Shown here piece after piece: positions 15,913 through 40,984 of a stretch of DNA of 64,000 nucleotides (position 1 is the first letter of the stretch; each line of letters starts with the position of its first letter). The stretch lies in the sequence record MK308675.1, one strand, 5' to 3'. The notes below the pieces were generated by a model that searched no databases, was not told where the DNA came from, and saw only the letters and a program-made list of their open reading frames with translations. The translations under genes and the position numbers were made by a program.

Positions 15913-17490
15913 ATGATTAATGAAAGTCCAAACCTAGTATTGGTTAAGGCAATAGTCGGTGAGTTTATTAACCGCACCTTGCCGCAGCCAAATGGTAAGC
16001 TTGAGACTGTCACGGATAAAGCACTGGCATTAGTTAAGATGCCTGCTGATACCATGGGCGACGGAAGCGAAGGAGAAATCGCTCACGCCCTCCGCACGAC
16101 ATTAGACTGGCTACGTACCCTACCAGAAGAAACTACTGTTAACCCAGTCGACTTAGTAGAGCGCGTGCGCATGAACTGCGCTTTCGGCTCTGACTATATA
16201 GATTCGCTAGAACGCCAGATAATCTTAGAGGACGATGCCTTTAAGAACGGTGAGCGAGTCAAGACTATTATTTCCGAATTGCAGTTCGCGTTGCGCAATC
16301 AGGAATTCTCCCAACTATTTAAAGACGCAAACAAACAAGTTAACTTTAATCGCGATGGTATTAATATTCGTGAGTTCGCTAAGCAGTTCACAGAGAACCT
16401 TCGTGAGTTTGAAAACGATGACCAATCTGCCGAGAAGGCTGGCTTTGGTGGCGGTCTTTCTACGGAAGACCTAGATAGCGTTGTAGAAGCACTACGTAAG
16501 TCTCAAGAGTACGTTTCCTCAGAAGGTGCTCTGAAAACAGGCCTTAAAGGTCTTAACAAGCTATTAGGCGGTAATGGCTACCGTCGAGGCGAGCAATTCA
16601 ACTATGGCGCGCTGACGCATAACTATAAGTCCGGTATCCTACTAGACCACTGTCGTTGGTTCTGTCGTCACAATACTCCTCACTTGTTAGACAAGAACAT
16701 GAAGCCGATGATTCTGCGTATCTCTTTCGAGAACAAACCAGAGCAGGACATCCCTCTTATGTACCGTTCTCTATGGGAGCAGGAGAACCAGAAGAAAGTA
16801 GACTTTGCTAAAGTCGACCCGCAGAAAGCCGCTAAGTACATCATCGACCGAATGAGCGCTACCGGCTTTGCTTTCGACATGAAGTGTTATGACCCGAACC
16901 AATTTGACGTTTGGGACTTAATCGATGTTCTTGCACAGTACGAGGCTAAAGGTTATGAAATCGCCGCAGTTATCATTGACTACCCTGAACTCATCACTAA
17001 GAAGTACACAGGTAAGTCAGCTAAGCGTACCGACGAAATCATCACGTATACTTTCGAAGTTCTACGCAACCATTGCTTCCCTCGAGGCATCACGCAAATT
17101 ACAGCGCACCAGCTTTCTACAGAAGCGCAGAAGCTAGCACGTGAAGGTACGTCTAACTTTGCTAAGAAAGTAGCGACTGGTTCGTACTACATGGGCTGCC
17201 AATCACTGGCAACGAAACTTGACGGCGAATGTATCTTACACATCCATAAAATCGGAGAAGAGTCTTTCCTTACCTTCGCTAGGGGAAAACACAGAGGTGG
17301 TGACCAGACCCCTATCAAACATCGCTCAATGGCGTACAAGTTTGAAGAGTTCGGCGGCATCTGTGACGACCTAGACGATGAGAGTGCTGACGGTAAAGCA
17401 CTTTACAGCTTCGCCGGTATCGATGGCGGCCATACTGAAGACGGCAGTGGAGACACTGGAGGTATGGTGATAGACTCGTCTGACTGGTAA
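15913..17490 (+). CDS. dnaB: DnaB-like replicative helicase (phiKZ gp118-like)
   Basis: TGLKGLNKLLGG.GYRRGE, variant Walker A GALTHNYKSG, ISFEN, Walker B VIIDY and ITAHQLS. Confidence 0.9.
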   Translation: MINESPNLVLVKAIVGEFINRTLPQPNGKLETVTDKALALVKMPADTMGDGSEGEIAHALRTTLDWLRTLPEETTVNPVDLVERVRMNCAFGSDYIDSLERQIILEDDAFKNGERVKTIISELQFALRNQEFSQLFKDANKQVNFNRDGINIREFAKQFTENLREFENDDQSAEKAGFGGGLSTEDLDSVVEALRKSQEYVSSEGALKTGLKGLNKLLGGNGYRRGEQFNYGALTHNYKSGILLDHCRWFCRHNTPHLLDKNMKPMILRISFENKPEQDIPLMYRSLWEQENQKKVDFAKVDPQKAAKYIIDRMSATGFAFDMKCYDPNQFDVWDLIDVLAQYEAKGYEIAAVIIDYPELITKKYTGKSAKRTDEIITYTFEVLRNHCFPRGITQITAHQLSTEAQKLAREGTSNFAKKVATGSYYMGCQSLATKLDGECILHIHKIGEESFLTFARGKHRGGDQTPIKHRSMAYKFEEFGGICDDLDDESADGKALYSFAGIDGGHTEDGSGDTGGMVIDSSDW

Positions 17491-20513: not shown

Positions 20514-21734
20514 TTACAGAAGCTGGATGAGCAACCAACAGATAACCGGGATGCGATAGAAGATAACCATACGGTCGGCTTCGTAGAGCGCTTCGATTTC
20601 TTTAATGACTTCTTCCAGCGTATAGCTCTCCTGACGAAGAACTTTGTTTACTAACACTTCTAACGGCGTCATGGCAGTTAGGTCGTGGTCGTAGAATGCT
20701 TTACTAAAGACGTATGTGTCGTCTCCGTCGTACTCGTTCTCGGTATATGTTACAAGACCCAGTAATGAGGGCTGAGAATGAGGGACAGCCACATAGTCCA
20801 CTTTAGAGAATGCCACAGCACTGTATATGTGTCGGGCCAGGAATTCACGTTTAGTAACTTCGTGAACATAACGGTCTACTCTCCGTAGGTGTGTAGGCTC
20901 GCCATCGGCTAAGATGTCCCATACGGAAGCAAAGGATTTCTTCGCGCGCTTAGAAGGCACGACATAACGCTTCATCGCTGGCAAGTGATAAGTGACCTGT
21001 TCCGGCAAGATGCGTGCCATAAACTCGGTGAGCTTCTCGTCATATACCTTTCGGTATTCACTTACGGAACCGATAGCGGTCTGCGTATCTAAATCGTAAT
21101 ACTCATCCCACCACCAATGAATCACTTCGTTAAGACGCGTAGCGATATCGTAGGATTCCAAGCGCTTCTGTTTAGACATGCCTGGAGCGAGTGGGTCTGA
21201 TGAATCAAAGTAAAGGGTCTCTGCCGTTTTAAGGTCGAGGTTTCTTTGATAGTCGTCAGACATATAGTCCACGAACTCATAAGTGATTTCGTTCGTACGG
21301 TGACCGTAGTAACCAGAACGACGATGTTGCGTTACAGTAAATAGACCCCAGCGGTTATCTGACATACGAGCAATAAACATATCGCCTGCATTAGGTTCCA
21401 CGCCTGGGTACAAGTTCGAAGTACCTGTTAGCGTAGTGATTTGCTGGTCATCCGTATCATGACTCAACGAGTCCGTCTGTAGGATAACGTAATCCTTAAT
21501 ACGGACATATTGCTGGATGGTTCTGGAAAGCCCCATGTCTAATCGCTGAGGGAAACTATTGCCGCCTAGCAACTGAGAGTAGTAAGTGACTTCCCACGGG
21601 TCACCTTCATAGCGAATCTCCGGAGAGATATGTTTCACCTCTGTCTCATAGACGGAGGGCGTGTCTGGTTCCTCGACTACCTTATCGGGTTCGGGAACTT
21701 CAACAATGTCTTCTTCTTCATCAAATAAAGGCAT
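20514..21734 (-). CDS. Virion structural protein, probable neck/head-tail connector (phiKZ gp99-like)
   Basis: 406 aa. YEGDPWEVTYYSQLL and LYPGVEPNAGDMFIA motifs, plus synteny. Confidence 0.6.
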   Translation of the reverse strand: MPLFDEEEDIVEVPEPDKVVEEPDTPSVYETEVKHISPEIRYEGDPWEVTYYSQLLGGNSFPQRLDMGLSRTIQQYVRIKDYVILQTDSLSHDTDDQQITTLTGTSNLYPGVEPNAGDMFIARMSDNRWGLFTVTQHRRSGYYGHRTNEITYEFVDYMSDDYQRNLDLKTAETLYFDSSDPLAPGMSKQKRLESYDIATRLNEVIHWWWDEYYDLDTQTAIGSVSEYRKVYDEKLTEFMARILPEQVTYHLPAMKRYVVPSKRAKKSFASVWDILADGEPTHLRRVDRYVHEVTKREFLARHIYSAVAFSKVDYVAVPHSQPSLLGLVTYTENEYDGDDTYVFSKAFYDHDLTAMTPLEVLVNKVLRQESYTLEEVIKEIEALYEADRMVIFYRIPVICWLLIQLL

Positions 21735-24675: not shown

Positions 24676-26004
24676 TTACTTTTCTAGGTTCTTCATTACT
24701 GCTTTAGATGCGCCTGCACAAGCAGCAGCATGTAGAGCTGACCACTTCGCTACGCCCTGATAAGCATCACGGATGGTCGTAGTGTACTGCTTAAGTTGCT
24801 CTAGGCGATTGAAGAACTCATCAAAAGGTGCACCGGCAAACTCAGCGTCTTTAAGGTTAGTCAACGCTTTGTTGATTGCCTTGATAAGATACTCACAGAA
24901 ATGCAAGACCGCTTTACCCGACTCGTTAGCCTGACGGTATGCTGCAATGCCTTCATAAGCGCGCTTAGCAAACGCCTTGGCGTCTCCGGCACTTACGTCG
25001 GTAATTGCTTCTGGTGCTTCCTTAGCACCCAACGCATCGCCGAAGTGAACGTTCAGTGCACGCTCTGAGTTCTCAGCAGGTACAGAGAAATAGATTGCTT
25101 TGCCGCCAGGTAGTTCTTCAGTAGAGACGTAAGACTTAGCACCTTTACCTAGACCTAACTTAGCACCGTCTTTCTCAGAGATAGACTTGGTCGCTGCGAA
25201 ACCACTAACGAACGCTTTGTTAAGTTGGTTGGTACTTTCCTTGATGCGGTTGTTTGTTTCAACCAGGTTAGTCTCATCGGCTTTCTCGATGTGTCCTTCC
25301 AGTTCACGAATCGCAGACAAGATAAGCTTACTTGCTTTAGAGTAGCGGTCTGTATAAGTGCGCATGCTACCGGTAAACAGTTTACCTTTAGCATATAAGT
25401 ATTCAACCTGAGGAACCTTAAGAGACTTCTCTTTAGGCTTACCTGTCGGATTGATACCATGTAGCTTGTCGATAGATTTCTCTAGACGAGCAACTTGGCT
25501 TAGGTGTTCATCGTAGAACTTAACACCAGCTGCAATAATTGCTTCAATTGCTTTAAGTAGCACCTTACCGACTTGTACGATAGTTTCTTTAACTGTCTTA
25601 CCTGCCGCTTCTACTTCTAGACGAACTGCTTCGACCTCATCGACGCCTTCCATTGAAGGTAGCTCGTAAGCCTGACGTATGCCTTCTAGGTTAACTGTGG
25701 CGTTGTCATAAAGCGTCATGGCGTATGCTGCGTCTTCACGCGTCATGCTATCGCCTTTAGCTTCGATGAATGCCTCGATGTGGCGAACCGATTCAGCTAA
25801 CGCTAAGTAGTCCGCTTGTACAGATTCATAAACAGATGCCGTAACTTCAGCTTCTGTGATTTCGATGTCGTGTAGTTCGATGTCGTCCACGTTGATTGCA
25901 GTCAATCCTGGTGTGACTTCATCTTTACTACCAACGACAGTCTTTGGCTGGCCAGCCGGAGCATTTACTGCACTAGCAATAATGCTTTTACGAAAGTCTT
26001 TCAT
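24676..26004 (-). CDS. Internal head protein paralogue
   Basis: Propeptide with PSME|G. KFYDEH..VARL.K.I and LPGGKAI motifs are shared with the 26131 ORF. Confidence 0.75.
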   Translation of the reverse strand: MKDFRKSIIASAVNAPAGQPKTVVGSKDEVTPGLTAINVDDIELHDIEITEAEVTASVYESVQADYLALAESVRHIEAFIEAKGDSMTREDAAYAMTLYDNATVNLEGIRQAYELPSMEGVDEVEAVRLEVEAAGKTVKETIVQVGKVLLKAIEAIIAAGVKFYDEHLSQVARLEKSIDKLHGINPTGKPKEKSLKVPQVEYLYAKGKLFTGSMRTYTDRYSKASKLILSAIRELEGHIEKADETNLVETNNRIKESTNQLNKAFVSGFAATKSISEKDGAKLGLGKGAKSYVSTEELPGGKAIYFSVPAENSERALNVHFGDALGAKEAPEAITDVSAGDAKAFAKRAYEGIAAYRQANESGKAVLHFCEYLIKAINKALTNLKDAEFAGAPFDEFFNRLEQLKQYTTTIRDAYQGVAKWSALHAAACAGASKAVMKNLEK

Positions 26005-29049: not shown

Positions 29050-30189
29050 TTACATTGAGTACTGTTCGCCTGCTTTGTAAGCACGCATGATTGCATTGAT
29101 GTCCATTGCACCAGGATTAGTTGCAGCTGGAGCGATTTGGTCGTACGAGTAATCACCGTACTCTTCAACGCCGCGCTGATAAATACGAACCAATTCCATT
29201 TCTTGGTCTACGACACAAAGAAGCATAGAACCAGTAAGCTCGAAGTACTTGTGACGGTGACGCTCTTTAGTAAGAGAACCGTTCATGATGCCTTCGATTT
29301 GACGAGCAGTGCGCTTAGTGATAACAATCATGGAAGACGCAATGTTCATCTGTTTCTTGCCGCTTAGGAAAGAACTTAACAGACCACGTTTCTGGCGAAT
29401 CTTCGCCATCTCGTATTGACCATCTTTATCATTGATAAGAAGGTCTAGGTCGTTCTCAATCATATCTACGCCAAGTGCGTAGTCAGCAAATGATTTAAAC
29501 TCACCCGCCATGTAGCGATGCCAACGGCCTTTGTAGCTGTTGTCGCGAGATAAGAACGCTTCAAGCGTCTTAAGCATAGTGCGAGTGTTTAGAGTGCGAG
29601 GATTAAGAGTACAAGTAACTTGAACCTTAACTTTATCTTCGGCATCTAGAGGAACTTCGATTACTTTACCTACCGCTAAGTTAGCTGGTTTAGAAAGGTC
29701 GATAGATTCCATCGATACTTCAATTAGCTCTTTGCGAGTTGGTTCTTGGAAGTCAGCCATGATATCAAGGTTGTCTTCGTCCCACGACTTACTAGCCGCA
29801 ACAGAACCGCCTAGGATGCCGTCAATGCAGAAATCGTCAGAACCCAACATTGCAACAGCAGTGTCGATTGTGTCATGCACATTGTAACGATTGTTTGAAG
29901 TTTGGTCTAAGATAGACATGACTTCGACGTTACCGATTTTAGTAACGCGTTGTACAACAGCTAGGTAATGGCCGATGTAAAGCGCTAAAAGAAGCTGGCT
30001 AATTGATTGAGAGACCTGAGGGTCCATACGAGAAATATCTTGCTCAAAAAGAGCCGGCGGAGACATGCGTGCGTACTGAGAGAACTCAGATAAAGAGCGA
30101 CGAGAGTCAGATGCGTTTAACGCCGCTTTAGCTCCCGCTCCCGCAATAGTCGTTGCTACATTTAGCAGTGTCTGTTCTGGAGTATTCAT
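29050..30189 (-). CDS. Head structural protein (phiKZ gp89-like)
   Basis: 379 aa. VSME|S site, NLAVGKVIEV and RWHRYMAGE...DYALG.D motifs. Confidence 0.75.
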   Translation of the reverse strand: MNTPEQTLLNVATTIAGAGAKAALNASDSRRSLSEFSQYARMSPPALFEQDISRMDPQVSQSISQLLLALYIGHYLAVVQRVTKIGNVEVMSILDQTSNNRYNVHDTIDTAVAMLGSDDFCIDGILGGSVAASKSWDEDNLDIMADFQEPTRKELIEVSMESIDLSKPANLAVGKVIEVPLDAEDKVKVQVTCTLNPRTLNTRTMLKTLEAFLSRDNSYKGRWHRYMAGEFKSFADYALGVDMIENDLDLLINDKDGQYEMAKIRQKRGLLSSFLSGKKQMNIASSMIVITKRTARQIEGIMNGSLTKERHRHKYFELTGSMLLCVVDQEMELVRIYQRGVEEYGDYSYDQIAPAATNPGAMDINAIMRAYKAGEQYSM

Positions 30190-30237: not shown

Positions 30238-31275
30238 ATGGCAACCAAGAAAATAGAAACCGTTCGTCGACAGTTAGGTTTCGGTTCACCGGAGTCGAAT
30301 GCTTACAATTTGTTCCACGGAATTAACCACCGAGGAACTGGGGATTTAACACCGACGAATCTTGATAACCACGGGTATGTGTTTTTCACGAAACCCGTTT
30401 TAAATTTAACAACGGACAATATCCGTAAAGTTAGTAAGCTATATTATTTAACTTCACAAGACTCTAATACTAACGGCACAGCTATCAAATGCTGCCTGAT
30501 GCCTAAACGTGAAGGTGACCGATACGAGCCAGGAAATACTCGTTCGGCTGTAATTGATGACAAGAGTGCTTTCATTCCGTTCCTAACAAACACACTCATT
30601 TCCTTCACAGGTTGGCCTGATGAGGTAACGGAATTTATCGACACGGACGAAGGTAACGCGAAAGAAATCCATGGCCATGTAGATGACCGCCCTGAGAACT
30701 TTGGCACCTTTGACTTGTCAGCTACGTTCGTTGCAAAAGAAGGCGACCCGCACATTGCCTTGTTCTCTGCTTGGCGTGAATATATGACCCGCGTAGCCGA
30801 GGGAACAACCATGACTCCTTTCCCTGAGATGATTGAATATGACGAAATCGATTACATGACTCGCCCTTATGTTCTCATCCTAGGGCCTGACCGTAAGCGC
30901 ATTCAAAAGATAGCAGCAGCGGGTGCGGCTGTTCCTAAAGCGGTCACGACAGGTGCTTCGTTTAACTACAACTCCGAAGCGGTATTCTCAGAAGAGAACC
31001 AACAGATAGATGTCCCATTTAAATGCTACGGAGCTATCTATAATGACCCGGCACTAATCGATGACTTTAACTGGACGGTGCAACAGTTTAACCCTGACAT
31101 GGAAGACTCACGCCGAGCAACATCGATGGTTAAGTTGACACCTCGCGAGAAGACGTTCTTTAACTTTTACGGATATCCGCGCATCGAAAAAGAAACGATG
31201 GAATTAGAATGGTGGCTCGATTTTGAAACTTACAATGCGCTACTATTACAACTAGAGGACGAAGGCGATGTCTAA
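30238..31275 (+). CDS. Virion structural protein (phiKZ gp88-like)
   Basis: 345 aa. GINHRG...P.N.DNHGYVFFTKP.LNL and GYPRI...T.ELEWW motifs. Confidence 0.7.
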   Translation: MATKKIETVRRQLGFGSPESNAYNLFHGINHRGTGDLTPTNLDNHGYVFFTKPVLNLTTDNIRKVSKLYYLTSQDSNTNGTAIKCCLMPKREGDRYEPGNTRSAVIDDKSAFIPFLTNTLISFTGWPDEVTEFIDTDEGNAKEIHGHVDDRPENFGTFDLSATFVAKEGDPHIALFSAWREYMTRVAEGTTMTPFPEMIEYDEIDYMTRPYVLILGPDRKRIQKIAAAGAAVPKAVTTGASFNYNSEAVFSEENQQIDVPFKCYGAIYNDPALIDDFNWTVQQFNPDMEDSRRATSMVKLTPREKTFFNFYGYPRIEKETMELEWWLDFETYNALLLQLEDEGDV

Positions 31276-34129
31276 TTACAAGTACATTGATGACTTGGCT
31301 AACCATTTTGCTATTTCGCCCGCTACGACATTTACGCACGGTACGCGAATGCTGAACGATGCGATTGGCGGCGAGGTGGACATAGCTGACCCTAACAACC
31401 CTTTCATCGGCTTGTTGGAAATTAACGCTACACAAGTAGCTGCTCTCATGCAAAGAACGGACGTATCTACGCGTAAACGTTTTGCTAAGCTAGCACAAAC
31501 TCTAACCGACCTTTACCCGCACATGTCCGATGAAGACTTTGCAGGTATCTTCGGTTCGCCTAACTACCAACATGTTATCTCGGTAGGCTTAGGTAAGAAT
31601 CAAATCATTGCAAACGCAGTTGCTGATTCTGGAACAGGACTTCGACACATCCGTATTCCTCGCGATACAATCTTCCGTGCCGATGACCTGCCTTTTACTA
31701 TTCATCAACCTATCGACATTTCGGTGTATCCAAACGGAGAACTGAGAGCAGAATTTGATAGTTCGGTTGAGTCTCCCATTAACAGACGACAATCTAACAT
31801 CATAGAAACTAACATCGGTTTCTGGGAAGGCACAGAGATGTTTGTAATGAACATTCCTTGTGACCAGTTAGATATCCTTTCTGTGGCTGAACCGGTTACC
31901 GCTTCTACGAGCTGGGAGCAGGAAGTGGAGATTGCGGGTAACTTCTTCTATGCTCGAGGTTACTACAGTTCAGATAACATTAACTGGACTGAGATGCATA
32001 CCACGTTCGATACTAATAACTTCGACCCTATCAATCCGACGATGGTTGTCCGTGTAGAAGATGGCTTGGTACGCTGCTTTATTCCAGACGTGTTCATTGA
32101 AGAAGAGCGTGTGGGTGCTTATGCTCGAGTTGACGTCTATACAACTCAAGGACGTATTAACATTGACTTGTCTAATTCAGACTCAGCGGATTGGGAAGCG
32201 GAATGGAACGACTACAGTGGGCTTTCTGCTGGCTACGTGGCTCCTCTGCAAAACATTACATCTCGCATAATTTTCTCTACCCAGGTTTCTACCGGCGGTA
32301 GCGATGCGATGACGTTTGAAGAAATCAAAGACCGCGTTATCTATAACCGCTTTGGTAAGAACGGTGCTTATACAGGCGAAGAGTTACGTCAAGAACTACG
32401 TGAGTTGGGCTATGAGTCTTCTCTACGTAAGGACACTCTGACTGACCGTATCTATGTTGCGTCTAAACGCATCGACGATGCTGTGCTGTTAAGTGACACG
32501 GGACTAGCCACAGGTATCGGCGTAATCTCCGAACCTATTGCTTTCTACACTGGACGCACCGACCTAGCCTACGCTATGCGCAAGCATACAACACGTGCTA
32601 CGATTCTGCCTGCTGCTCTTTATAAAGAACAGTCCGGTGGCGTTAGTATTCTGAGTGAAGCCGAGAAAGACGCATTACATGCTCTGACTCCAAGTGCGCT
32701 TGTAGACGAGCTGAACCAAAACGATTACTTCTACACTCCTTTCTACACTGTGCTGGATTACACAAACACATTGTTTACATCTCGCGCTTATTGGTTAAGC
32801 AGTCCAGAAGTTGTTTATCGTAATGCTCTTGTCAACAACAATGCTTTAGGTTTCACAGCATCGACTACAGACGTTCAGGTCACACACGACACGGACAAGA
32901 TGTCTGTTAAAGTTACAGCGGCCAGACCTAAAGATGTAACTGGCATTCATCTACAGATGACGTTCAAAGGCGATGATGAAGAACTGTACTACGTAACTCA
33001 ACCAGCTACGTACTTGACAGACACAACAATGGAGTTCACGTTCGAGTTCGGAACAACATACGACATTGATTCTTCTCACAACTTTAACACAACGGCTAAA
33101 GATAAGAACCACAGCACTGTAGATGTCCGCATCAACTTGGAACAAGAGTTTGAGCTGTTCTTTATCGTAGAGACTCCTACTTCGACTGCTTCATCTTTCG
33201 ATGATAAGTTCTACTCCGGTGGCTACGGTACAACAGTAACTGCTATTGCGTATGAAAACCTTAAGGCTCGTTTCGGTCGTTACTTAGATGGCCTGTTCCT
33301 TTCTTCACGTACCCTTGTTCAATCGGCAACTTATGAACTTCACTTAGTAGATGTTCCTGAGACTTACCTAGAGAACGTGTACGAGACAGACGCGAATGGT
33401 TACAAGCCATATGTGGATAACGACGGCAACATCACCTTTAACTTGCTACATGCAATCGGTGACCCTAAGCTCGATGGCAATGGCGACCCAGTCTACCTAC
33501 ATCGCGCAGGCGACCCTAAGCTAAATGCTGCTACAGGCGACCCTATCATTGCGAACCCGGAAGACTATTCTCGCGAAGTTCGTCTACCTCTGTTAGATGC
33601 TCGTTTCCTATTAGCAACGGACGAGTCCATTGTAGCGTACAGAGAAGCTCTACCAGCTCGCATTTACGAGTACTTGAGCAAAGACATTGCTGAACTGAGA
33701 AAGAGCGTCCTAGAGCGCACAAACTTGTTCTACGAACCTCTAACTAACCAACAGTCTACTCTGGTTAAAGTAGCGGACGGAAGAGAACAGTCTATGCGTA
33801 CCGCTCTGGCATTCGCGATTGACTTCCAGCTAACTGTGCCGGCTTATGAGAATGACGCATTCCGTGCTGCTCTGATTAGTTCGGCTAAGACCACCCTGGC
33901 AACTATCCTTTCTTCTAACGAAATTGCGATGTCTGTCATTACGTCTCAGTTGAAAGCATTGGCGCCGGATAACATTCTTAATGTGACTGTGTCTAACCCA
34001 ATCGGTTCTACTGGCTATGCTTCTATTCAAGAAGCACTTTCTAGCTTTAGTATCGGTAAGACTATGCGTCTACAGCCAAACGGTCAAACTGTTATTGTGG
34101 ATGACGTTAGTGTTTCGTTCTCGAAATAG
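31268..34129 (+). CDS. Baseplate wedge-like virion protein (phiKZ gp87-like)
   Basis: 953 aa. DPNNPF..LLE and STGGSDAMTFEEIKDRVI (T4 gp6-like GG.D.E motif), plus synteny. Confidence 0.7.
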   Translation: MSNYKYIDDLANHFAISPATTFTHGTRMLNDAIGGEVDIADPNNPFIGLLEINATQVAALMQRTDVSTRKRFAKLAQTLTDLYPHMSDEDFAGIFGSPNYQHVISVGLGKNQIIANAVADSGTGLRHIRIPRDTIFRADDLPFTIHQPIDISVYPNGELRAEFDSSVESPINRRQSNIIETNIGFWEGTEMFVMNIPCDQLDILSVAEPVTASTSWEQEVEIAGNFFYARGYYSSDNINWTEMHTTFDTNNFDPINPTMVVRVEDGLVRCFIPDVFIEEERVGAYARVDVYTTQGRINIDLSNSDSADWEAEWNDYSGLSAGYVAPLQNITSRIIFSTQVSTGGSDAMTFEEIKDRVIYNRFGKNGAYTGEELRQELRELGYESSLRKDTLTDRIYVASKRIDDAVLLSDTGLATGIGVISEPIAFYTGRTDLAYAMRKHTTRATILPAALYKEQSGGVSILSEAEKDALHALTPSALVDELNQNDYFYTPFYTVLDYTNTLFTSRAYWLSSPEVVYRNALVNNNALGFTASTTDVQVTHDTDKMSVKVTAARPKDVTGIHLQMTFKGDDEELYYVTQPATYLTDTTMEFTFEFGTTYDIDSSHNFNTTAKDKNHSTVDVRINLEQEFELFFIVETPTSTASSFDDKFYSGGYGTTVTAIAYENLKARFGRYLDGLFLSSRTLVQSATYELHLVDVPETYLENVYETDANGYKPYVDNDGNITFNLLHAIGDPKLDGNGDPVYLHRAGDPKLNAATGDPIIANPEDYSREVRLPLLDARFLLATDESIVAYREALPARIYEYLSKDIAELRKSVLERTNLFYEPLTNQQSTLVKVADGREQSMRTALAFAIDFQLTVPAYENDAFRAALISSAKTTLATILSSNEIAMSVITSQLKALAPDNILNVTVSNPIGSTGYASIQEALSSFSIGKTMRLQPNGQTVIVDDVSVSFSK

Positions 34130-34175: not shown

Positions 34176-35621
34176 TTATGCCGTCATGATAGCAGCAGCG
34201 AGTTCTTCAGATGAAGTACCTGCGATGATTTGGAAGCCAGTCTTACCTAAGGTCACAAACTTAAACCCTAGGGCAGCTACCGCATTTGTATCTACTAGCT
34301 CAGTAGTCTTAAGTGTGAAACGAATACGAGTAATGCAACCTTCCACATGCTCAATGTTATCGCGTCCTCCTACTGCCACTAAAATCTTCTTAGCAATAGA
34401 AGGGTTACTAAAATTTGAGGAACTACCTTTCTTATCAGCAGTTAAAGCCGACGTACAGTAGATGCGAGTCTCTTCTTGTACTGTAAGAACCTTACCTAGC
34501 ATCTCAGAGAAGTATGCTACGTATTTAGCCTGTTCAGACACAAGTAGACCGATAGCGGTGTTACAAGCTTGCAGTGTCTTCACTGCGTCACCTGCGATAC
34601 CTACTTGGTCTTCATCCATCTTCTGCGTGATAGAAGTAGTGCGTTTCAAGAAGCTAGAGTGACGCTTCTTATATTTAGAAACCGCATCTTCCATCTTGTC
34701 CATTGCTTTGTCCATGCTGTTACGAGCTTCCTGGATTTCTTTAGTATCTGGAAGTTTACGAATAGCGTCTAAATCAACGAACTTCTTGGTACGCTCTTCT
34801 TTCTGATGCTGGAGCCATGCTCTGCGCTGAGCATTAATCTGCATACAGAACGGAGAAGCTTGCTTAGGCCCTACTTTATAGAAGAACGGAGAAGGCGTCA
34901 TGAACGAGTTGCTGTCGATTGGGCGTGCGCCAGGAACAACAATGCTTAAAGAAGCAGTTGCTGAGTACATTGGCTCGAAAGCTTTCTCAAACTCTTTAAG
35001 TAGAGTATCTTTCAAACCACCTACAGACGAAGAGCTGTCAATGAATGATTTCAGTTCTTTGTATGCCATCTCGTTAAGTTTCTCGCCCACTTCTAAAGCA
35101 TGTACGACGTCGTTAACTGCTTGCTCTAGTACGTCAGGTCCTGAACTGTCCCAAGGTGCAAACGTAGGGTCATACTGAGCAATCTGGTCATCCACGTTAG
35201 GGAAAGCTTGTACGAAGCCATTACGGAACTCTTCAGAGTCTGCGTCTGCGTCTGGAGTCTTAACGCGAGAACCACGAAGTAGCTCTGCTAGCTTACGGCG
35301 AATAGCCTTGATAACTTTCAAGACAATCTCGTACACCTTCTCACCGCCAGCTACAGCTAAACTGAATGCTTTAGCGAAGATAGACTCCATCGCCACTTCT
35401 ACGTTCATTTGAGAATTAAACTCGGTAAAAGCTTTAACTGGATATTCGTCAGTGAAGTCTTTCATGCCGTACGCTGATTCCATAGCAACGACGTCGCCAC
35501 GGTTGATGCCTGAATAAGAAATCTTATCAGCCAACTTAAGAAGGGCCGATAACTCGACCGCTCCGTGTTGTTCATCTAGCGTTGCGGCTTCCAGCTCAAT
35601 ATCGATTTGCTCGAAGTCCAT
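34176..35621 (-). CDS. Internal head protein with C-terminal PTS EIIB (glucose/GlcNAc-type) domain
   Basis: Two VAME|S processing sites and an amphipathic helix at the N-terminus. The last 73 aa (34176-34397) read ILVAVGGRDNIEHVEGCITRIRF...LG...QIIAG, the EIIB type-1 signature with the phosphorylated Cys. Confidence 0.8.
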   Translation of the reverse strand: MDFEQIDIELEAATLDEQHGAVELSALLKLADKISYSGINRGDVVAMESAYGMKDFTDEYPVKAFTEFNSQMNVEVAMESIFAKAFSLAVAGGEKVYEIVLKVIKAIRRKLAELLRGSRVKTPDADADSEEFRNGFVQAFPNVDDQIAQYDPTFAPWDSSGPDVLEQAVNDVVHALEVGEKLNEMAYKELKSFIDSSSSVGGLKDTLLKEFEKAFEPMYSATASLSIVVPGARPIDSNSFMTPSPFFYKVGPKQASPFCMQINAQRRAWLQHQKEERTKKFVDLDAIRKLPDTKEIQEARNSMDKAMDKMEDAVSKYKKRHSSFLKRTTSITQKMDEDQVGIAGDAVKTLQACNTAIGLLVSEQAKYVAYFSEMLGKVLTVQEETRIYCTSALTADKKGSSSNFSNPSIAKKILVAVGGRDNIEHVEGCITRIRFTLKTTELVDTNAVAALGFKFVTLGKTGFQIIAGTSSEELAAAIMTA

Positions 35622-36427
35622 TAGTAATTCTCCTCTTCGGTCTCAGCGTAAGGGTTAACAATTACTTTCTCTTCCAGCATCGCTTCGATGATGTCAATCC
35701 AGTCCGGTTGCTCTGAGTAACCCATGATAATCTGCTTACAAACTTCATGGTGCTGAGGACCGATGTTCATGTTACCCAGGCAGGCTACTACGTAGTCGTA
35801 GTCACGGATATCGCCGAACGTAACACCGTCACGGTTAGTAATCATGAATTCTAACATGCGCGTCACCACGTTCTGGATGACGGCCTTCATGGCGTTTAAG
35901 CGATAAGCCGGAATATCGTCGTCATATTTCTCTTCCATAGCAGTGAAAATGGACTGTACTATGGTCTCTTTAGAACCTGCAATGTTGTTATTGCGGAAAG
36001 AAATACCTGAAAAGATTTCTTGATGTTGGCGAGTATGCTCCAAAAGGAAATCGAAAGCCATGTAATCGTCGCGTTCAGTCAGGTCTTCGACTTCTTCAAA
36101 CACTTGCCAGAAGCGGATGTGGTTACAGATTACATAGCCGGGGTCAGTCCAATAACGAGAACGGTCCTTGTAGATGCGACGTGCTAGTTCAACCACGAGG
36201 TCACAATCGCACATAATCGAACGGGCCATGCGTTTCGCTTCTGCCTTCGCTAGAGGGAACACGCTTTCCATCCAGATGTTATCGAACTGATAGTCGTACT
36301 CGTAATGGTAGATAGGTAGTGACTTTTGAATTTCGAAAGCGGCTAGCAACGTAGACACGCTCATGTTAGGTAATAGGACTGCCGAGTGTTTACGTGCAAT
36401 CTCATTCAATAAACGATATTTGTCCAT
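35621..36427 (-). CDS. Hypothetical virion-region protein (phiKZ gp85-like by synteny)
   Basis: 268-aa ORF translationally coupled to the EIIB-fusion gene (TAATG overlap). Confidence 0.55.
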   Translation of the reverse strand: MDKYRLLNEIARKHSAVLLPNMSVSTLLAAFEIQKSLPIYHYEYDYQFDNIWMESVFPLAKAEAKRMARSIMCDCDLVVELARRIYKDRSRYWTDPGYVICNHIRFWQVFEEVEDLTERDDYMAFDFLLEHTRQHQEIFSGISFRNNNIAGSKETIVQSIFTAMEEKYDDDIPAYRLNAMKAVIQNVVTRMLEFMITNRDGVTFGDIRDYDYVVACLGNMNIGPQHHEVCKQIIMGYSEQPDWIDIIEAMLEEKVIVNPYAETEEENY

Positions 36428-36433
36428 TGCTAA

Positions 36434-37783
36434 TTATCCTTCGAGTTTAGCAGCCAAGTAGTTAAGGTTGCTGTTAGAGAAATCTTCAAGTAGTTGTTGG
36501 CCCTTCAGTGAGCGATATGCTTTGCGGCCAGCAGGGAAGAATGTTTTACCGAACCATTGGAAAACGCCTAAAGCATCTTCATAGTTCTCGAGTAGTTCGT
36601 CGATAGCTTCAATTTCCATCGCTACCATCTTACGAGTATCTCGGTCTTTTGCATCTTTCAAGCGTGCAACGGTTTCGAGACGGATAACTTCTACTCGACG
36701 TTTAGGGTTGTCGTATACCGACTGCTGAATCTTGCTTTCTGCATACATGTTAGAAAGAAGTACCAACTGCACGAATGCGAAACAGACTAGAGCTAGAGGT
36801 ATGCTACCGCCGCCCGACAGAGCCGCTGCTGCAAGGAGCCCGGTATAGAAAGTAGAAGCTAAGTAGATAGTCATGGTTGCTGCAAAGCTAACTGCGTTGC
36901 CCCAGCGAGTACGTCGCTCCGTGTGCCATGCTCTATCTAGCTTGTTCATGCCTTTAGCTAAATGTACGCCCAAGCCCATGCGAGAAACGTATTGGTCAGC
37001 CAGAGATTCCCACGAACGAACTTCGTAGATGTTCAAGCCTAAGTCCGAACGAGACTTTTCGATACATTCGTTGTACATTACAACGCGTAGCTCATCTTCG
37101 TTCTTAGCGTTCAAGATAGCTTTCTCGCTACCTTTACCGATGCCGTGCTCTTGTTGCAGCTCAAAGATGTAATTCATCTTGTCGGCGTTTTCTTTTGCGC
37201 CGATAACTGCTTGAACGAAACCAGTAAGTACAAAGTTAGTGATGGACTGACGGTAGCCCCATTCGTAGAATGAAACTAAATGTCCCAGTTCGTGGAACAG
37301 AATGGCTGCTAGTTCTTCAGACGTGAACTTGTACGGAGTGTTCTTATGGTAAAACTCTGTACCCAGCTTAATGATATGCTCGTAGTGTTCAGGTGCACCT
37401 TCGATGCGACCAGTGGTACGATTTACACGCCAGTGGAAGTTCTCATGTTTCTTCATGAAAACAGTTTGTGCTTTGGTATCGGCTTCCCAGTCGATTCCGT
37501 AGTAATCCATGTAACTGCGATAGAATGGGTGGTCACCCAAAGCTTTAGGGAACTCTACGTAAGCATTGGCTCCTTCGAAGGCACCGATGTTAACTTTAGC
37601 TCCGACCATCGCTGTTACTTTCTCGTCAAGGCCACTCGCCTTGATGTTTCTATCGTTCCAGCCTTCCTGTCGAATCCGGTCGATAGTTTCGACGATGTCT
37701 TTCACATCATCGCGGTCCCATTGGAAATCAATCGCTTCCATGGAGACTTCTGTCTTTGGTAAAAATGCGTTAACACTAAACAC
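36434..37783 (-). CDS. Head protein with HExxH zinc-peptidase motif and hydrophobic helices (phiKZ gp84-like)
   Basis: VSME|AIDFQ N-terminus, AAILFHELGH (37280-37294) and ESLADQY, followed by two hydrophobic segments. Confidence 0.7.
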   Translation of the reverse strand: MFSVNAFLPKTEVSMEAIDFQWDRDDVKDIVETIDRIRQEGWNDRNIKASGLDEKVTAMVGAKVNIGAFEGANAYVEFPKALGDHPFYRSYMDYYGIDWEADTKAQTVFMKKHENFHWRVNRTTGRIEGAPEHYEHIIKLGTEFYHKNTPYKFTSEELAAILFHELGHLVSFYEWGYRQSITNFVLTGFVQAVIGAKENADKMNYIFELQQEHGIGKGSEKAILNAKNEDELRVVMYNECIEKSRSDLGLNIYEVRSWESLADQYVSRMGLGVHLAKGMNKLDRAWHTERRTRWGNAVSFAATMTIYLASTFYTGLLAAAALSGGGSIPLALVCFAFVQLVLLSNMYAESKIQQSVYDNPKRRVEVIRLETVARLKDAKDRDTRKMVAMEIEAIDELLENYEDALGVFQWFGKTFFPAGRKAYRSLKGQQLLEDFSNSNLNYLAAKLEG

Positions 37784-39658: not shown

Positions 39659-40984
39659 TTAGTCTTTGCCTGCAATCATGATAACGTAAACGTTAAGCGC
39701 TTCGATAAGCGTACGCAGGAATCGCTCAGATGACTCTAAGTAAGAAACCGCGTTCATGTGAGACTTAGGAATAGAACGAATCATTTCCTGAAGAATCTGA
39801 ATGTCCTTATCGTTACGGCCATTGTGGTAACGTTTAAGGTCTTCAGCTGCATCACGTAGAATGTCACCGCCACTTGCACCGAACGTTTCTAAGTTATCCT
39901 TAGCACGACGGATTTCACCAGCGATTTGTTCACGCTTAGAATCTAGTTTAGCTGTGATAGCACGTAGCTCTTCTAGGTCACGGTAGCTTAGCTTAGGCAT
40001 GCCCTTAGGTAGACGAGAAGGTACGTTAGTATCTAGCTTGCCTTCAGTGTAAGAGAACATAAGCGTATGCATCTTGATAAGGCCAGAGCGCTCAGGGATA
40101 AATGTAGGGTATACGTCGCCCAGTAGCTTGCGCCCAGTCTTAAGATACTTACCGCGTAGACGTAGCTTAGCAATAGAAGCTAAGTCAGCCTGTTCGATTT
40201 CTTTGATGCCTTTGTTCAGAACCCAGTCGAAGTCTTGGATATCGCGCATAGTCATAACCGTGTTAATAACACGCTCATACGCAGTGCGGTCCATAGAAGA
40301 CGTTAGGTCGTTGAAGAACTGAAGCACAGATTCACATTGTGAAACTAGGTCACCGTACTTACCGTTTAGAACGAACTTAGAAAGAACGTTTACTTCACCA
40401 CGGTATGCTGGCGGGATAAGAATAGTCACGTCTTCGCTAATCATTGCTTTGTCTACTACTCGACCGTTAGGGTCAGTAAAGACATGAGCACCTGCACCGT
40501 CCAAGCTTTCTTTCTCTTCTGGTGTCATCTTAGCACCTGGCTCTAAGCCAAAGCGTTTGATTGTCTCTTCTGCTTCTTCTACGCGCTTCTGGAATGCAAC
40601 CAACTTGTCAGCTGCTTCTTTGTTCTTTTGGAACAATAGCTCAGATACCGCTGTAAAGAGCATACGAGCTCGACGGATAAGACCTTGGATAAGTTTAGCG
40701 ATTGCATCGTAAACACGCGCAGGGACGTCGCTAAGACCTTCCATGGCTACTTCTGTCTCAGCCACTACATCGAACTCACCAAATAGCTGGGAGATAGAAG
40801 TGTAACCAAGTTGAGTAGCGACTACTTTCAATGACATTTCTGCTTGAGCGCGAGTACGCTCATTAACGTCGTTTTTGCTAAACCACTCTAAGACCGTTTG
40901 AGTAGTTGCTAACGCAGCATCAACGTTCTTAATCTCGCGGTACAGCCGGGCTTGCTCAAGCTCCGCTGAAACAATGTTACTCAT
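39659..40984 (-). CDS. Internal head protein paralogue
   Basis: 441 aa. Propeptide ending in VAME|G, followed by an amphipathic helix (VYDAIAKLIQGLIRRARMLF). Confidence 0.65.
   Translation of the reverse strand: MSNIVSAELEQARLYREIKNVDAALATTQTVLEWFSKNDVNERTRAQAEMSLKVVATQLGYTSISQLFGEFDVVAETEVAMEGLSDVPARVYDAIAKLIQGLIRRARMLFTAVSELLFQKNKEAADKLVAFQKRVEEAEETIKRFGLEPGAKMTPEEKESLDGAGAHVFTDPNGRVVDKAMISEDVTILIPPAYRGEVNVLSKFVLNGKYGDLVSQCESVLQFFNDLTSSMDRTAYERVINTVMTMRDIQDFDWVLNKGIKEIEQADLASIAKLRLRGKYLKTGRKLLGDVYPTFIPERSGLIKMHTLMFSYTEGKLDTNVPSRLPKGMPKLSYRDLEELRAITAKLDSKREQIAGEIRRAKDNLETFGASGGDILRDAAEDLKRYHNGRNDKDIQILQEMIRSIPKSHMNAVSYLESSERFLRTLIEALNVYVIMIAGKD

What the first reader, a model, noticed from the sequence alone, without database searches (positions are those of the whole stretch)
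34176..35621. Virion-packaged internal head protein carrying an intact PTS EIIB phosphoacceptor domain
Seen: the 481-aa ORF has the local ejection-protein architecture (acidic propeptide, two VAME|S sites, amphipathic helix). After a K/G/S linker (ADKKGSSSNFSNPS) it ends in 73 aa reading IAKKILVAVGGRDNIEHVEGCITRIRFTLK...LG...GFQIIAGTSSEEL, with the Cys codon at 34335-34337. Established: the pattern GG..N....CITR.R is the EIIB type-1 domain of PtsG/NagE-family sugar transporters, whose Cys accepts phosphate from EIIA. Dephospho-EIIB(Glc) sequesters the repressor Mlc, and the EIIA(Glc) phosphorylation state controls adenylate cyclase and inducer exclusion. Inference: a soluble EIIB injected with the genome could act as a phosphate sink, sensor or Mlc decoy. 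It could rewire carbon metabolism and cAMP at minute zero or read host nutritional state, or it could dock the incoming genome or early-infection vesicle on PTS membrane complexes. No EIIC or EIIA gene is in the window. I know of no described virion-delivered PTS mimic.
Basis: partly seen in the sequence, partly recalled or inferred. Interest (0 to 1): 0.88.

Follow-up and report, generated by a model that had tools for sequence, protein, structure and literature searches.

The report
Phage head protein carrying PTS EIIB
A giant Vibrio phage has fused a complete sugar-transport signalling domain (PTS EIIB, with its phosphate-accepting cysteine) to the end of a protein that relatives build into the inner wall of the capsid; this is a rare pairing, and it may let the phage touch the host's sugar-sensing system, but no function has been shown.

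Summary
[quoted passage not shown] The 481-aa ORF at 34176-35621(-) is identical in four isolates.

**EIIB domain.** The ORF ends in a complete EIIB(Glc/Nag)-type domain:
- Pfam PF00367, 46 bits.
- AF2 pLDDT above 90.
- Foldseek TM 0.90 and rmsd 0.9 Å to E. coli IIB(Glc).
- Cys429, Arg432, Arg434 and Gln464 correspond to Cys421, Arg424, Arg426 and Gln456.

**Propeptide.** The acidic propeptide, two VAME|S sites and an amphipathic helix are real. The second site aligns with the experimentally verified SQE-122 protease site of PhiKZ gp86.

The protein fails the PF12699 "internal head protein" threshold. By synteny and profile similarity it is the counterpart of PhiKZ gp86 and Goslar gp65. [quoted passage not shown] They were once "expected to be ejected", but ejection has never been shown.

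**Distribution.**
- Syntenic orthologues in related metagenomic phages (376-397 aa) lack EIIB.
- Only one other viral EIIB was found, a membrane-anchored one in Vibrio phage 2.275.O.
- The phage encodes no EIIA or EIIC.

**Function is inferred only.** A host-PTS or Mlc interface is most likely. A purely structural co-option is a serious rival. About 55 copies per virion and the chimallivirus injection vesicle argue against a "phosphate sink".

The parts
34176..35621 (-). Whole gene: 481-aa head-protein precursor (QAX96017.1). It is the positional counterpart of PhiKZ gp86 and Goslar gp65, with a C-terminal EIIB domain.
35385..35621 (-). Acidic N-terminal propeptide, residues 1-79 (17 D/E against 5 K/R). 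It is the likely capsid-targeting module and is removed by the prohead protease.
   Evidence: It is homologous to Goslar gp65 residues 64-152 (hhalign probability 96.4%, E 1.2e-9; PDB profile search E 1.4e-9). The role is inferred from the PhiKZ and SPN3US literature.
35478..35489 (-). Candidate protease site 1: VAME|S, residues 45-48, cleavage after Glu48.
   Evidence: The site is conserved as [SA][LM]E[SG] in most family members.
35385..35396 (-). Candidate protease site 2: VAME|S, residues 76-79, cleavage after Glu79. The mature chain would start at Ser80.
   Evidence: Glu79 is invariant in the family. The site aligns with NVTISQE of PhiKZ gp86 (8y6v_G residues 116-122), which is the verified gp175 cleavage site SQE-122 (PMC5694885).
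35265..35348 (-). Amphipathic helix, residues 92-119, just after the maturation site.
   Evidence: It has the highest hydrophobic moment in the protein, about 0.7. AF2 predicts a helix over 71-117.
34440..35384 (-). Predicted mature all-helical body, residues 80-394.
   Evidence: AF2 secondary structure is all-helical, with low confidence beyond residue 120. Residues 61-162 align with PhiKZ gp86 residues 100-205. Seven homologues of 376-397 aa end here.
34398..34439 (-). Flexible linker ADKKGSSSNFSNPS, residues 395-408.
   Evidence: Residues 392-401 have pLDDT below 50. The linker contains no [SAG]-x-E site.
34179..34397 (-). Complete PTS EIIB (Glc/Nag type) domain, residues 409-481.
34320..34337 (-). 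Active-site loop C429-I-T-R432-I-R434, equivalent to PtsG C421, R424 and R426.
   Evidence: The roles of the residues are taken from PMC13482132.
35621..36427 (-). Upstream 268-aa gene. Its stop codon overlaps the start codon of the 481-aa gene by one base. It sits in the position of PhiKZ gp85. In phage BONAISHI its homologue is fused to the gp86-like gene (ORF98, 638 aa).
36434..37783 (-). Synteny anchor: homologue of the PhiKZ gp84 head protein. It carries an HExxH motif.
   Evidence: BLASTP E 6e-16; phrog_2767
31268..34129 (+). Synteny anchor: 953-aa virion protein, homologue of PhiKZ gp87 and Goslar gp63.
29050..30189 (-). Synteny anchor: homologue of PhiKZ gp89 and Goslar gp61. Goslar gp61 has been shown to be injected.
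   Evidence: BLASTP E 1e-25; Goslar data
39659..40984 (-). Another head-type protein with the same propeptide signature (ETEVAME|GL at residues 76-82).
   Evidence: Its metagenomic counterpart has a weak PF12699 hit.

Best explanation
Identity (shown by homology).
The gene encodes the Yong-phage counterpart of the PhiKZ gp86 / Goslar gp65 head protein. The precursor would be taken into the prohead through its acidic N-terminal propeptide. The T4 gp21-like prohead protease would cut it after Glu48 and Glu79. The mature chain (Ser80 to Ala481) would stay in the capsid. If the stoichiometry of gp86 and gp65 holds, there would be about one copy per asymmetric unit around each non-portal vertex, roughly 55 per virion.

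Lineage-specific addition (shown).
In the Yong lineage alone, this chain has gained a linker plus a complete EIIB(Glc/Nag)-type domain at its C-terminus. All phosphoacceptor and partner-contact residues are present (Cys429, Arg432, Arg434, Gln464). The phage supplies no EIIA or EIIC.

Function (inferred).
The domain still works as a PTS interface. It would either accept phosphate from host EIIA~P of the glucose/GlcNAc class, or dock with its active-site face on a host partner (Mlc or an EIIC). The fusion to a packaged protein would exist to place that interface where the capsid contents meet the host at the start of infection. This would make it a cargo domain, in the way T4 Alt is cargo. With about 55 tethered copies it could act only as a binder, decoy or localiser, not as a bulk phosphate sink.

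My probabilities for each step:
- gp86-type packaged, protease-processed head protein: about 0.8.
- EIIB retains a PTS-partner interaction: about 0.55.
- That interaction takes place after delivery from the virion: about 0.3.
For: EIIB domain:
- Complete and canonical by HMM, sequence and predicted fold.
- The Mlc- and EIIA-facing residues R424, R426 and Q456 are conserved. S428 is replaced by Thr.

Deep divergence with the signature kept:
- No close donor exists. Nothing but the protein itself was found among 5.8 billion proteins.
- The best cellular matches, drawn from the motif-preselected loci of the 185,579-species genome collection, are only 42-45% identical.
- GC3 of the domain's coding segment is within the phage's range.
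- The domain has therefore diverged deeply while keeping the catalytic signature, which argues for selection on that surface.

Head-protein identity:
- The gene order gp84-gp85-gp86-gp87-gp88-gp89-gp90-gp91-IPs is preserved, with strong anchors.
- The family profile hits Goslar gp65 (E 1.4e-9) and PhiKZ gp86 (E 4.8e-4) as the top two PDB matches. hhalign agrees.
- The cleavage site aligns with the verified SQE-122 site.
- The Yong genome has a gp21-like prohead protease, QAX96122.1, according to PMC7765460.
- The VAME[SG] motif is enriched more than 100-fold in window proteins.

Lineage specificity and locus behaviour:
- Syntenic orthologues of 376-397 aa lack the domain.
- The locus accretes domains. 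Goslar gp65 has an extra domain, and BONAISHI ORF98 is a fusion of two genes.
- The authors of the SPN3US study proposed that the locus diversifies through host interaction. A C-terminal truncation of SPN3US gp47 gives normal-looking but non-infectious virions (PMC5694885).

Independent precedent:
- Vibrio phage 2.275.O encodes an EIIB on a short multi-pass membrane anchor, with no EIIC.
- That is the same arrangement that, according to work cited in PMC13482132, suffices to inactivate Mlc by membrane localisation.
Against: - No experiment exists for this phage. There is no virion proteome and no phosphorylation or binding data.
- Cryo-EM of PhiKZ and Goslar places gp86 and gp65 in an interdigitated complex on the capsid wall. 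No linker cleavage site is predicted. The EIIB may therefore never leave the capsid.
- Yong has a chimallin homologue. Proteins injected by such phages co-localise with a membrane-bound vesicle. This would probably keep them away from cytoplasmic EIIA, Mlc and the cytoplasmic face of EIIC. That topological step is my inference.
- Homology to gp86 and gp65 covers only about residues 21-162. The curated PF25617 gp86 model does not hit the protein.
- Only one sequence lineage exists, so selection on the active site cannot be measured.
- Detecting the domain by its signature motif biases the sample towards copies that kept it.
Confidence: 0.45

Rival explanations
1. Structural co-option. The EIIB fold serves only as a small filler or brace domain of the vertex-binding complex inside the capsid, or as a contact with the packaged DNA through its phosphate-binding arginines. 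It has no dealings with the host PTS.
For: [quoted passage not shown] PhiKZ uses a separate beta-rich protein, gp184, to fill the gap between gp86 and the capsomer. Goslar lacks gp184 and gp162, and its gp65 carries an extra folded domain that occupies the place of gp28. gp86-family proteins are resolved as fixed wall components. No ejection has been demonstrated for them.
Against: A purely structural domain has no reason to keep Cys, both Arg and Gln of the phosphotransfer site while about 60% of other positions changed. The 14-residue Gly/Ser/Lys linker is flexible and its start is modelled at low confidence (residues 392-401, pLDDT below 50), which suggests a tethered domain rather than an integrated one. 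Seven related phages manage without any such domain.
Confidence: 0.3
2. Action in the producing cell before packaging. The precursor is made in large amounts late in infection. Its EIIB would engage EIIA~P, Mlc or membrane EIIC in the cytoplasm, to tune sugar uptake and cAMP or to bring assembly intermediates to the membrane. Packaging would be incidental.
For: This avoids both the vesicle-topology problem and the low copy number per virion, because thousands of precursors would be present per infected cell. That estimate is my inference from structural-gene expression. The second phage EIIB, in 2.275.O, lies among non-structural genes and must act inside the infected cell.
Against: It does not explain why the domain is fused to a capsid-internal protein rather than expressed alone or on a membrane anchor, as in 2.275.O. 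No expression-timing data exist for this phage.
Confidence: 0.15
3. Neutral passenger or artefact. The domain would be a recent, functionless capture of the 3' end of a host IICB gene, or an assembly or annotation chimera.
For: EIIB is the C-terminal domain, preceded by a linker, in the best-matching IICB families. A simple 3'-end capture is therefore mechanistically easy.
Against: The fusion is identical in four isolates. The reading frame is intact. No close donor exists anywhere. Codon GC3 is within the phage's range. The deep divergence is incompatible with a recent capture.
Confidence: 0.05

Closest known systems
PhiKZ gp86 (Pfam PF25617; PDB 8Y6V chain G) and Goslar gp65 (PDB 11fg): vertex-binding complex proteins of chimallivirus capsids
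   Same: The gene position is the same, between the gp85-position gene and the gp87 homologue, with conserved anchors on both sides. The N-terminal module and the first ~85 residues of the mature chain are homologous. The protease site aligns with the verified SQE-122 site. The body is all-helical. Goslar gp65 shows that this family can gain an extra C-terminal domain.
   Different: PF25617 does not score on the Yong protein. Similarity fades after about residue 160. Neither gp86 nor gp65 carries an EIIB or any recognisable cellular domain.
E. coli PtsG IIB(Glc) domain (PDB 1IBA, 3BP3, 1O2F, 3BP8) and NagE-type IIB
   Same: The predicted fold is the same (TM 0.88-0.90). The alignment is ungapped over 69 residues at about 32% identity. 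The Cys-Ile-Thr-Arg-x-Arg loop and the Gln are conserved.
   Different: The domain is not tethered to an EIIC transporter. No cognate EIIA or EIIC is encoded by the phage. It is attached instead to a capsid-internal protein. Phosphorylation is untested.
Vibrio phage 2.275.O AUS02926.1, annotated 'phosphotransferase system EIIB' (250 aa)
   Same: It is the only other viral protein with this domain found in the phage genome collection and in BFVD. It also comes from a jumbo Vibrio phage. The EIIB is also C-terminal, also has CITRLR, and also lacks an EIIC.
   Different: Its N-terminal half is a short hydrophobic multi-pass anchor, not a head protein. It lies among non-structural genes. Its EIIB is no closer to Yong's than cellular EIIBs are (51.6 bits against up to 58 bits), so the two acquisitions were probably independent.
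SPN3US gp47 (essential head 'ejection' protein in the gp86 locale)
   Same: It occupies the same locale in a related giant phage. [quoted passage not shown] Its C-terminal part is needed for infectivity but not for assembly. The authors suggested a host-specific function for it (PMC5694885).
   Different: I did not test sequence similarity to it. gp47 has a predicted transmembrane segment and no EIIB.
T4 Alt and the T4 internal proteins (capsid-targeting sequence, gp21 cleavage, injection with the DNA)
   Same: The logic is the same: an N-terminal targeting peptide removed by a gp21-type protease, and a cargo domain carried in tens of copies per head. This rests on established knowledge as summarised in PMC5694885.
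   Different: The proteins are unrelated in sequence. The T4 cargo is proven to be injected and to be enzymatically active. Here both points are inferred.

Membership tests
PTS EIIB type 1 (glucose/sucrose superfamily, PF00367) | HMM match above the curated threshold, over the whole model | tested here: met
   46.3 bits against a cut-off of 27, profile positions 1-34 of 34. Full-domain alignments to the NagE and PtsG IIBC models.
PTS EIIB type 1 (glucose/sucrose superfamily, PF00367) | Split alpha/beta sandwich fold of IIB(Glc) | tested here: met
   AF2 pLDDT 92-98. Foldseek TM 0.90 and rmsd 0.9 Å to 3bp8_C; TM 0.88 to 1o2f_B. The structure is predicted, not solved.
PTS EIIB type 1 (glucose/sucrose superfamily, PF00367) | Phosphoacceptor Cys in the beta1-beta2 turn, with the two flanking Arg | tested here: met
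   C429, R432 and R434 align with C421, R424 and R426. Residue roles are from PMC13482132.
PTS EIIB type 1 (glucose/sucrose superfamily, PF00367) | Phosphorylated by a cognate EIIA, passing phosphate on to sugar bound in EIIC | not testable with these tools
   This needs a biochemical assay.
PTS EIIB type 1 (glucose/sucrose superfamily, PF00367) | Part of, or encoded with, a sugar-specific EIIC (and EIIA) | tested here: not met
   No EIIC, EIIA or HPr family was found in 52 window ORFs. No EIIA(Glc) homologue was found in any Vibrio phage record. The rest of the protein is a phage head protein.
PhiKZ gp86 / Goslar gp65 vertex-binding protein | Conserved gene position in the head-gene block | tested here: met
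   The order gp84-85-86-87-88-89 is preserved. Anchors: E 6e-16, E 1e-25, the gp87 homologue and PF23971 for gp88.
PhiKZ gp86 / Goslar gp65 vertex-binding protein | Sequence homology to family members | tested here: inconclusive
   The family profile hits gp65 at E 1.4e-9 and gp86 at E 4.8e-4. hhalign gives 96.4% and 74.7% probability. The matches cover only about residues 21-162. The curated model PF25617 gives no hit, although it scores 516 bits on PhiKZ gp86.
PhiKZ gp86 / Goslar gp65 vertex-binding protein | N-terminal propeptide removed by the prohead protease at an [S/A/G]-x-E site | tested here: inconclusive
   AME-79 aligns with the verified SQE-122 site. Glu79 is invariant and the motif is enriched. 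Cleavage itself has not been observed.
PhiKZ gp86 / Goslar gp65 vertex-binding protein | Located on the inner capsid surface at the five-fold vertices | not testable with these tools
   This needs virion mass spectrometry or cryo-EM of Yong.
phiKZ-like internal head (inner body) proteins, PF12699 | HMM match above the curated threshold | tested here: not met
   16 bits, E 0.006-0.0075, against a cut-off of 27, and only residues 291-357. A true member lies nearby at 24676-26004 (E 7.6e-41).
Virion-delivered (injected) effector proteins, T4 Alt type | Protein leaves the capsid with the DNA and acts in the host | not testable with these tools
   There is only indirect literature: 'expected' for gp86 and inferred for SPN3US gp47. 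Goslar gp60 and gp61 are shown to be injected, but gp65 was not tested.

The most novel reading that the evidence does not exclude
A virion-delivered PTS mimic. About 55 copies of an EIIB domain, tethered to a head protein, would be released with the genome. At the very start of infection they would bind the host's Mlc repressor, EIIA(Glc) or an EIIC transporter. This would either rewire carbon-source signalling or use the PTS membrane complex as a landmark for the incoming genome compartment. The membrane-anchored EIIB of Vibrio phage 2.275.O would be a second, independent solution to the same task. Together they would define PTS mimicry as a strategy of marine jumbo phages.
Probability: 0.2. 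Interest if true: 0.85.

Novelty: new variant of a known kind. Interest (0 to 1): 0.62.

Why it matters
Head proteins that carry cargo domains into the capsid are known, for example T4 Alt, P1 Dar and virion RNA polymerases. No PTS signalling domain has been reported among them.

If the EIIB is functional, it would link jumbo-phage infection to the host's central carbon-sensing circuit (EIIA(Glc), cAMP, Mlc). In vibrios that circuit also governs chitin use and biofilm formation.

The finding also gives a concrete, mutable handle (Cys429) on the unknown role of the fast-evolving gp86 / gp47 locus of chimalliviruses.

If the domain is only a structural filler, it is still a clean example of a cellular signalling fold recruited into a capsid's inner scaffold.

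Tried and rejected
- **Word-indexed homologue searches.** Searches with the whole protein, the EIIB region and the family alignment returned only the protein itself, plus one known homologue. They said nothing about donors.
- **IMG/VR scan.** The scan with an alignment of the two phage EIIB domains found no viral relative. The peptide patterns used were very specific, so this is weak negative evidence.
- **PHROGs.** No family matched the protein.
- **BLASTP against window paralogues.** Comparison with the 441-aa ORF and the true PF12699 protein showed no significant similarity beyond the site motif. I therefore rejected the idea of a local paralogue family.
- **Small vertex-complex partners.** The gp85- and gp91-position proteins show no BLASTP similarity to PhiKZ or Goslar. 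Conservation of the whole vertex complex in Yong is unproven.
- **Goslar chimallin.** It found no Vibrio phage. The closer BONAISHI ChmA was needed to find the Yong homologue.
- **Helical body.** AF2 modelled residues 120-400 with low confidence, and Foldseek found no gp86 or gp65 match for it. Fold-level orthology of the body is untested.
- **EIIB tree.** I did not build one. The cellular sample was pre-selected by motif and the domain has only about 70 residues, so a tree would not identify a donor. Pairwise scores already show that the two phage EIIBs are not each other's closest relatives.
- **Contaminated 'phage' records.** Many records with EIIB or EIIA hits (the Listeria, Staphylococcus and Enterococcus 'phage' contigs) are unannotated fragments that look like host DNA. 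I ignored them.
Full report
**What is there.**
[quoted passage not shown] This is a 290.5-kb jumbo phage of Vibrio mediterranei, and every CDS in the stretch of the record I inspected (20-50 kb) is annotated 'hypothetical protein'. The ORF 34176-35621(-) is real. It is 100% identical in four separately deposited isolates, so the fusion is not an artefact of one assembly.

**The EIIB domain is genuine and complete.**
- PF00367 matches at 46.3 bits (cut-off 27) over the full 34-position model, residues 411-444.
- NCBIfam IIBC transporter models align the entire ~72-residue domain. The best are the GlcNAc-type model (TIGR01998, 51.6 bits) and the PtsG-type model (45.1 bits).
- phmmer against the PDB returns E. 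coli IIB(Glc) chains at E about 3e-7. The alignment is ungapped, residues 407-475 against PtsG 399-467.
Arg432, Arg434 and Gln464 correspond to Arg424, Arg426 and Gln456.
- A 2026 cryo-EM study lists Arg424, Arg426, Gln456 and Ser428 as the residues around the phosphorylation site that contact Mlc. In Yong, Ser428 is replaced by Thr436 (PMC13482132).
- AlphaFold2, run with an alignment that included 28 cellular EIIBs, gives pLDDT 92-98 for residues 410-481.
- Foldseek superposes the model on the EIIB of the Mlc complex (3bp8_C, TM 0.90, rmsd 0.9 Å) and of the EIIA complex (1o2f_B, TM 0.88).

**The N-terminal architecture is also as described.**
- Residues 1-79 carry 17 acidic against 5 basic residues.
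- VAME|S occurs at residues 45-49 and 76-80.
- VAME[SG] occurs four times in the 20,263 residues of likely window proteins, against 0.036 expected. None of 2000 shuffles reached that count.
- The other two copies of the motif lie in the 792-aa ORF 98-2476 and the 441-aa ORF 39659-40984.
- The strongest amphipathic helix of the protein follows the second site, at residues 92-119.
- The linker ADKKGSSSNFSNPS begins in a low-confidence stretch of the model (pLDDT below 50 for residues 392-401) and contains no protease-type site.

**What the protein is.**
An exhaustive phmmer search with residues 1-405 against 1.84 billion representatives found seven distant homologues.
- All are 376-397 aa long. 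They end where the Yong linker begins and carry no EIIB.
- All come from metagenome assemblies.
- The two whose contexts I fetched sit in the same gene order as in Yong.
- In the alignment, Glu79 is invariant and both sites are conserved as [S/A]-[L/M]-E-[S/G].

A profile of this family finds two top PDB matches: Goslar gp65 (E 1.4e-9) and PhiKZ gp86 (E 4.8e-4). hhalign gives 96.4% and 74.7% probability respectively.

The gene order around the ORF reproduces the PhiKZ block gp84-gp85-gp86-(gp87, gp88 on the other strand)-gp89-gp90-gp91-internal proteins. The anchors are strong:
- gp84, E 6e-16.
- gp89, E 1e-25.
- The gp87 homologue.
- The PF23971 protein in the gp88 position.

In the profile alignment, NVEVAME|S of Yong lies over NVTISQE|A of PhiKZ gp86, ending at residue 122. 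SQE-122 is the cleavage site of the PhiKZ prohead protease, verified by mass spectrometry (PMC5694885; PMC11297242). Yong encodes a T4 gp21-like prohead protease, according to the annotation table of PMC7765460. Its major capsid protein belongs to the PhiKZ gp120 family (PF25620, E 1e-177).

The protein is therefore best described as the gp86/gp65-position head protein of this phage. It does not qualify as a PF12699 'internal head protein': it scores 16 bits against a cut-off of 27. A true member of that family lies nearby at 24676-26004.

Two caveats apply:
- The curated Pfam gp86 model (PF25617) does not hit the Yong protein.
- Detectable similarity ends near residue 160.

**What is known about that family.**
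- The complex is compositionally plastic. Goslar gp65 has an extra folded domain that occupies the place PhiKZ gives to gp28. PhiKZ also uses a separate beta-rich gp184, which Goslar lacks.
- Earlier proteomic and genetic work regarded gp86 as 'expected to be ejected'.
- In SPN3US, a C-terminal truncation of the protein in this locale (gp47) gives normal-looking but non-infectious virions. The authors proposed that the locus diverges through host-specific interactions (PMC5694885).
- I found no direct test of ejection for gp86 or gp65.
- In BONAISHI, the closest cultured relative, the homologue of the Yong upstream 268-aa gene and the gp86-like gene are fused into one 638-aa ORF. This again shows that the locus rearranges domains.

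**How unusual the EIIB is.**
- No close donor exists. Word-indexed searches of 5.8 billion proteins return only the protein itself.
- A motif scan of 185,579 species' genomes gave 63 cellular EIIBs. The best full-domain matches are 42-45% identical and are spread over Actinomycetota, Clostridia, Shewanella and others.
- GC3 of the domain's coding segment is 0.33, within the phage's range of 0.44 ± 0.07.
- Among 50,697 phage records, one other genuine phage EIIB turned up. It is Vibrio phage 2.275.O AUS02926.1 (250 aa), already annotated as 'phosphotransferase system EIIB'.
- In BFVD, only the Yong protein itself and one 250-aa protein match at E ≤ 1e-3. From its length, that protein is presumably the 2.275.O protein.
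- The 2.275.O protein has a hydrophobic multi-pass N-terminal half, a C-terminal EIIB with CITRLR, and non-structural neighbours. Its EIIB is no closer to Yong's than cellular ones are, so the two acquisitions look independent.
- Neither phage encodes an EIIA(Glc). The Yong window has no EIIA, EIIC or HPr family.
- Literature searches found no paper that combines EIIB with jumbo phages or virions.

**How it most likely works.**

*Shown by homology.* The protein is a packaged head-protein precursor. It has a cleavable targeting propeptide and a lineage-specific, intact EIIB attached by a flexible tether.

*Inferred.* Because the catalytic and partner-binding surface survived deep divergence, the domain probably still engages a host PTS partner. 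It would either accept phosphate from EIIA~P, or bind Mlc or an EIIC through its active-site face. The fusion to a capsid-internal protein would place that interface among the capsid contents that first meet the host.

*Limits on this reading.*
- If the gp86 stoichiometry holds, there are about 55 copies per virion. That can titrate a scarce regulator or localise a complex. It cannot drain the cellular EIIA~P pool.
- Yong has a chimallin homologue at genome position 76366-78027 (E 4e-22 with BONAISHI ChmA). Proteins injected by such phages accompany the DNA into a membrane-bound vesicle. By my topological reasoning, this would separate them from cytoplasmic partners.
- The family's resolved position on the capsid wall leaves open that the domain never leaves the head.

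*Rivals.* I therefore keep two serious alternatives:
- A purely structural co-option within the plastic vertex complex (about 0.3).
- Action of the abundant precursor in the producing cell before packaging (about 0.15).

A neutral or artefactual fusion is very unlikely (about 0.05).

**Comparison and verdict.**
- The thing works like a T4 Alt-type cargo protein in its packaging logic.
- By position and partial homology it belongs with PhiKZ gp86 and Goslar gp65.
- Its C-terminus is a bona fide member of PF00367 in sequence and fold, but it lacks the defining transporter context.

The fusion is unreported and rare, with two viral EIIBs in all and only this one in a structural protein. I class it as a new variant of a known kind: a head protein with an accreted cargo domain.

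The interpretation needs three changes: the family assignment is corrected, the 'injected' step is downgraded to a hypothesis, and the 'phosphate sink' idea is set aside on stoichiometry. Interest 0.62.

Noticed in passing
L004:5482-6234 (+) = Vibrio phage 2.275.O MG592671.1 200473-201225: A second jumbo Vibrio phage encodes a 250-aa protein with a hydrophobic multi-pass N-terminal half and a C-terminal EIIB (CITRLR; PF00367, 55 bits). It has no EIIC. A membrane-anchored EIIB without a transporter is the minimal arrangement reported to inactivate Mlc, so the protein could be a phage Mlc decoy.
   Followed up: partly
window 36434-37783 (-): The 449-aa homologue of the PhiKZ gp84 head protein carries an HExxH motif (FHELGH, aligned with HEIGH of gp84) and a long hydrophobic stretch near residues 300-345. 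It may be a zinc-metallopeptidase-like protein packaged in the head. PHROG 2767 lists its function as unknown.
   Followed up: no
window 35621-36427 (-) and L006:11886-13802 (-): The 268-aa gene upstream overlaps the start codon of the 481-aa gene by one base. In phage BONAISHI the homologues of the two genes are fused into one 638-aa ORF (ORF98), with the propeptide/cleavage module in the middle. That suggests a polyprotein cut by the prohead protease.
   Followed up: partly
window 98-2476 (-) and 39659-40984 (-): Two further proteins carry the same candidate protease signature: EEISME|S and EVAME|S in the 792-aa ORF, and EVAME|G in the 441-aa ORF. The local cleavage consensus seems to be [V/I]-[A/S]-M-E|[S/G]. 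The major capsid protein may be cut at SEE-84, just before the start of its Pfam match.
   Followed up: partly
MK308674.1 76366-78027 (-), outside the window: The Yong phages encode a homologue of the BONAISHI nuclear-shell protein ChmA (E 4e-22, 86% coverage). Yong is therefore probably a nucleus-forming chimallivirus. Goslar ChmA was too distant to detect it.
   Followed up: yes
window 13118-15241 (-); 15913-17490 (+); 24676-26004 (-); 20514-21734 (-): Functional names can be given to several 'hypothetical' genes: a PhiKZ gp120-type major capsid protein (PF25620, E 1e-177), a divergent DnaB-like ATPase (PF20307), a true PF12699 internal head protein, and a head-tail joining protein (PF24214 / PF24215). 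A ClpP-family protease (PF00574) and an RNA polymerase beta fragment (PF00562) are also in the window. I did not map those two to ORFs.
   Followed up: partly
phage collection records such as OR848305.1, OR846860.1, OR844993.1, PQ520057.1: Many unannotated records labelled as Listeria, Staphylococcus, Enterococcus or Salmonella 'phage' carry ordinary PTS EIIB and EIIA genes. They look like host-DNA contigs deposited under phage names. They inflate apparent counts of phage-encoded PTS genes.
   Followed up: no
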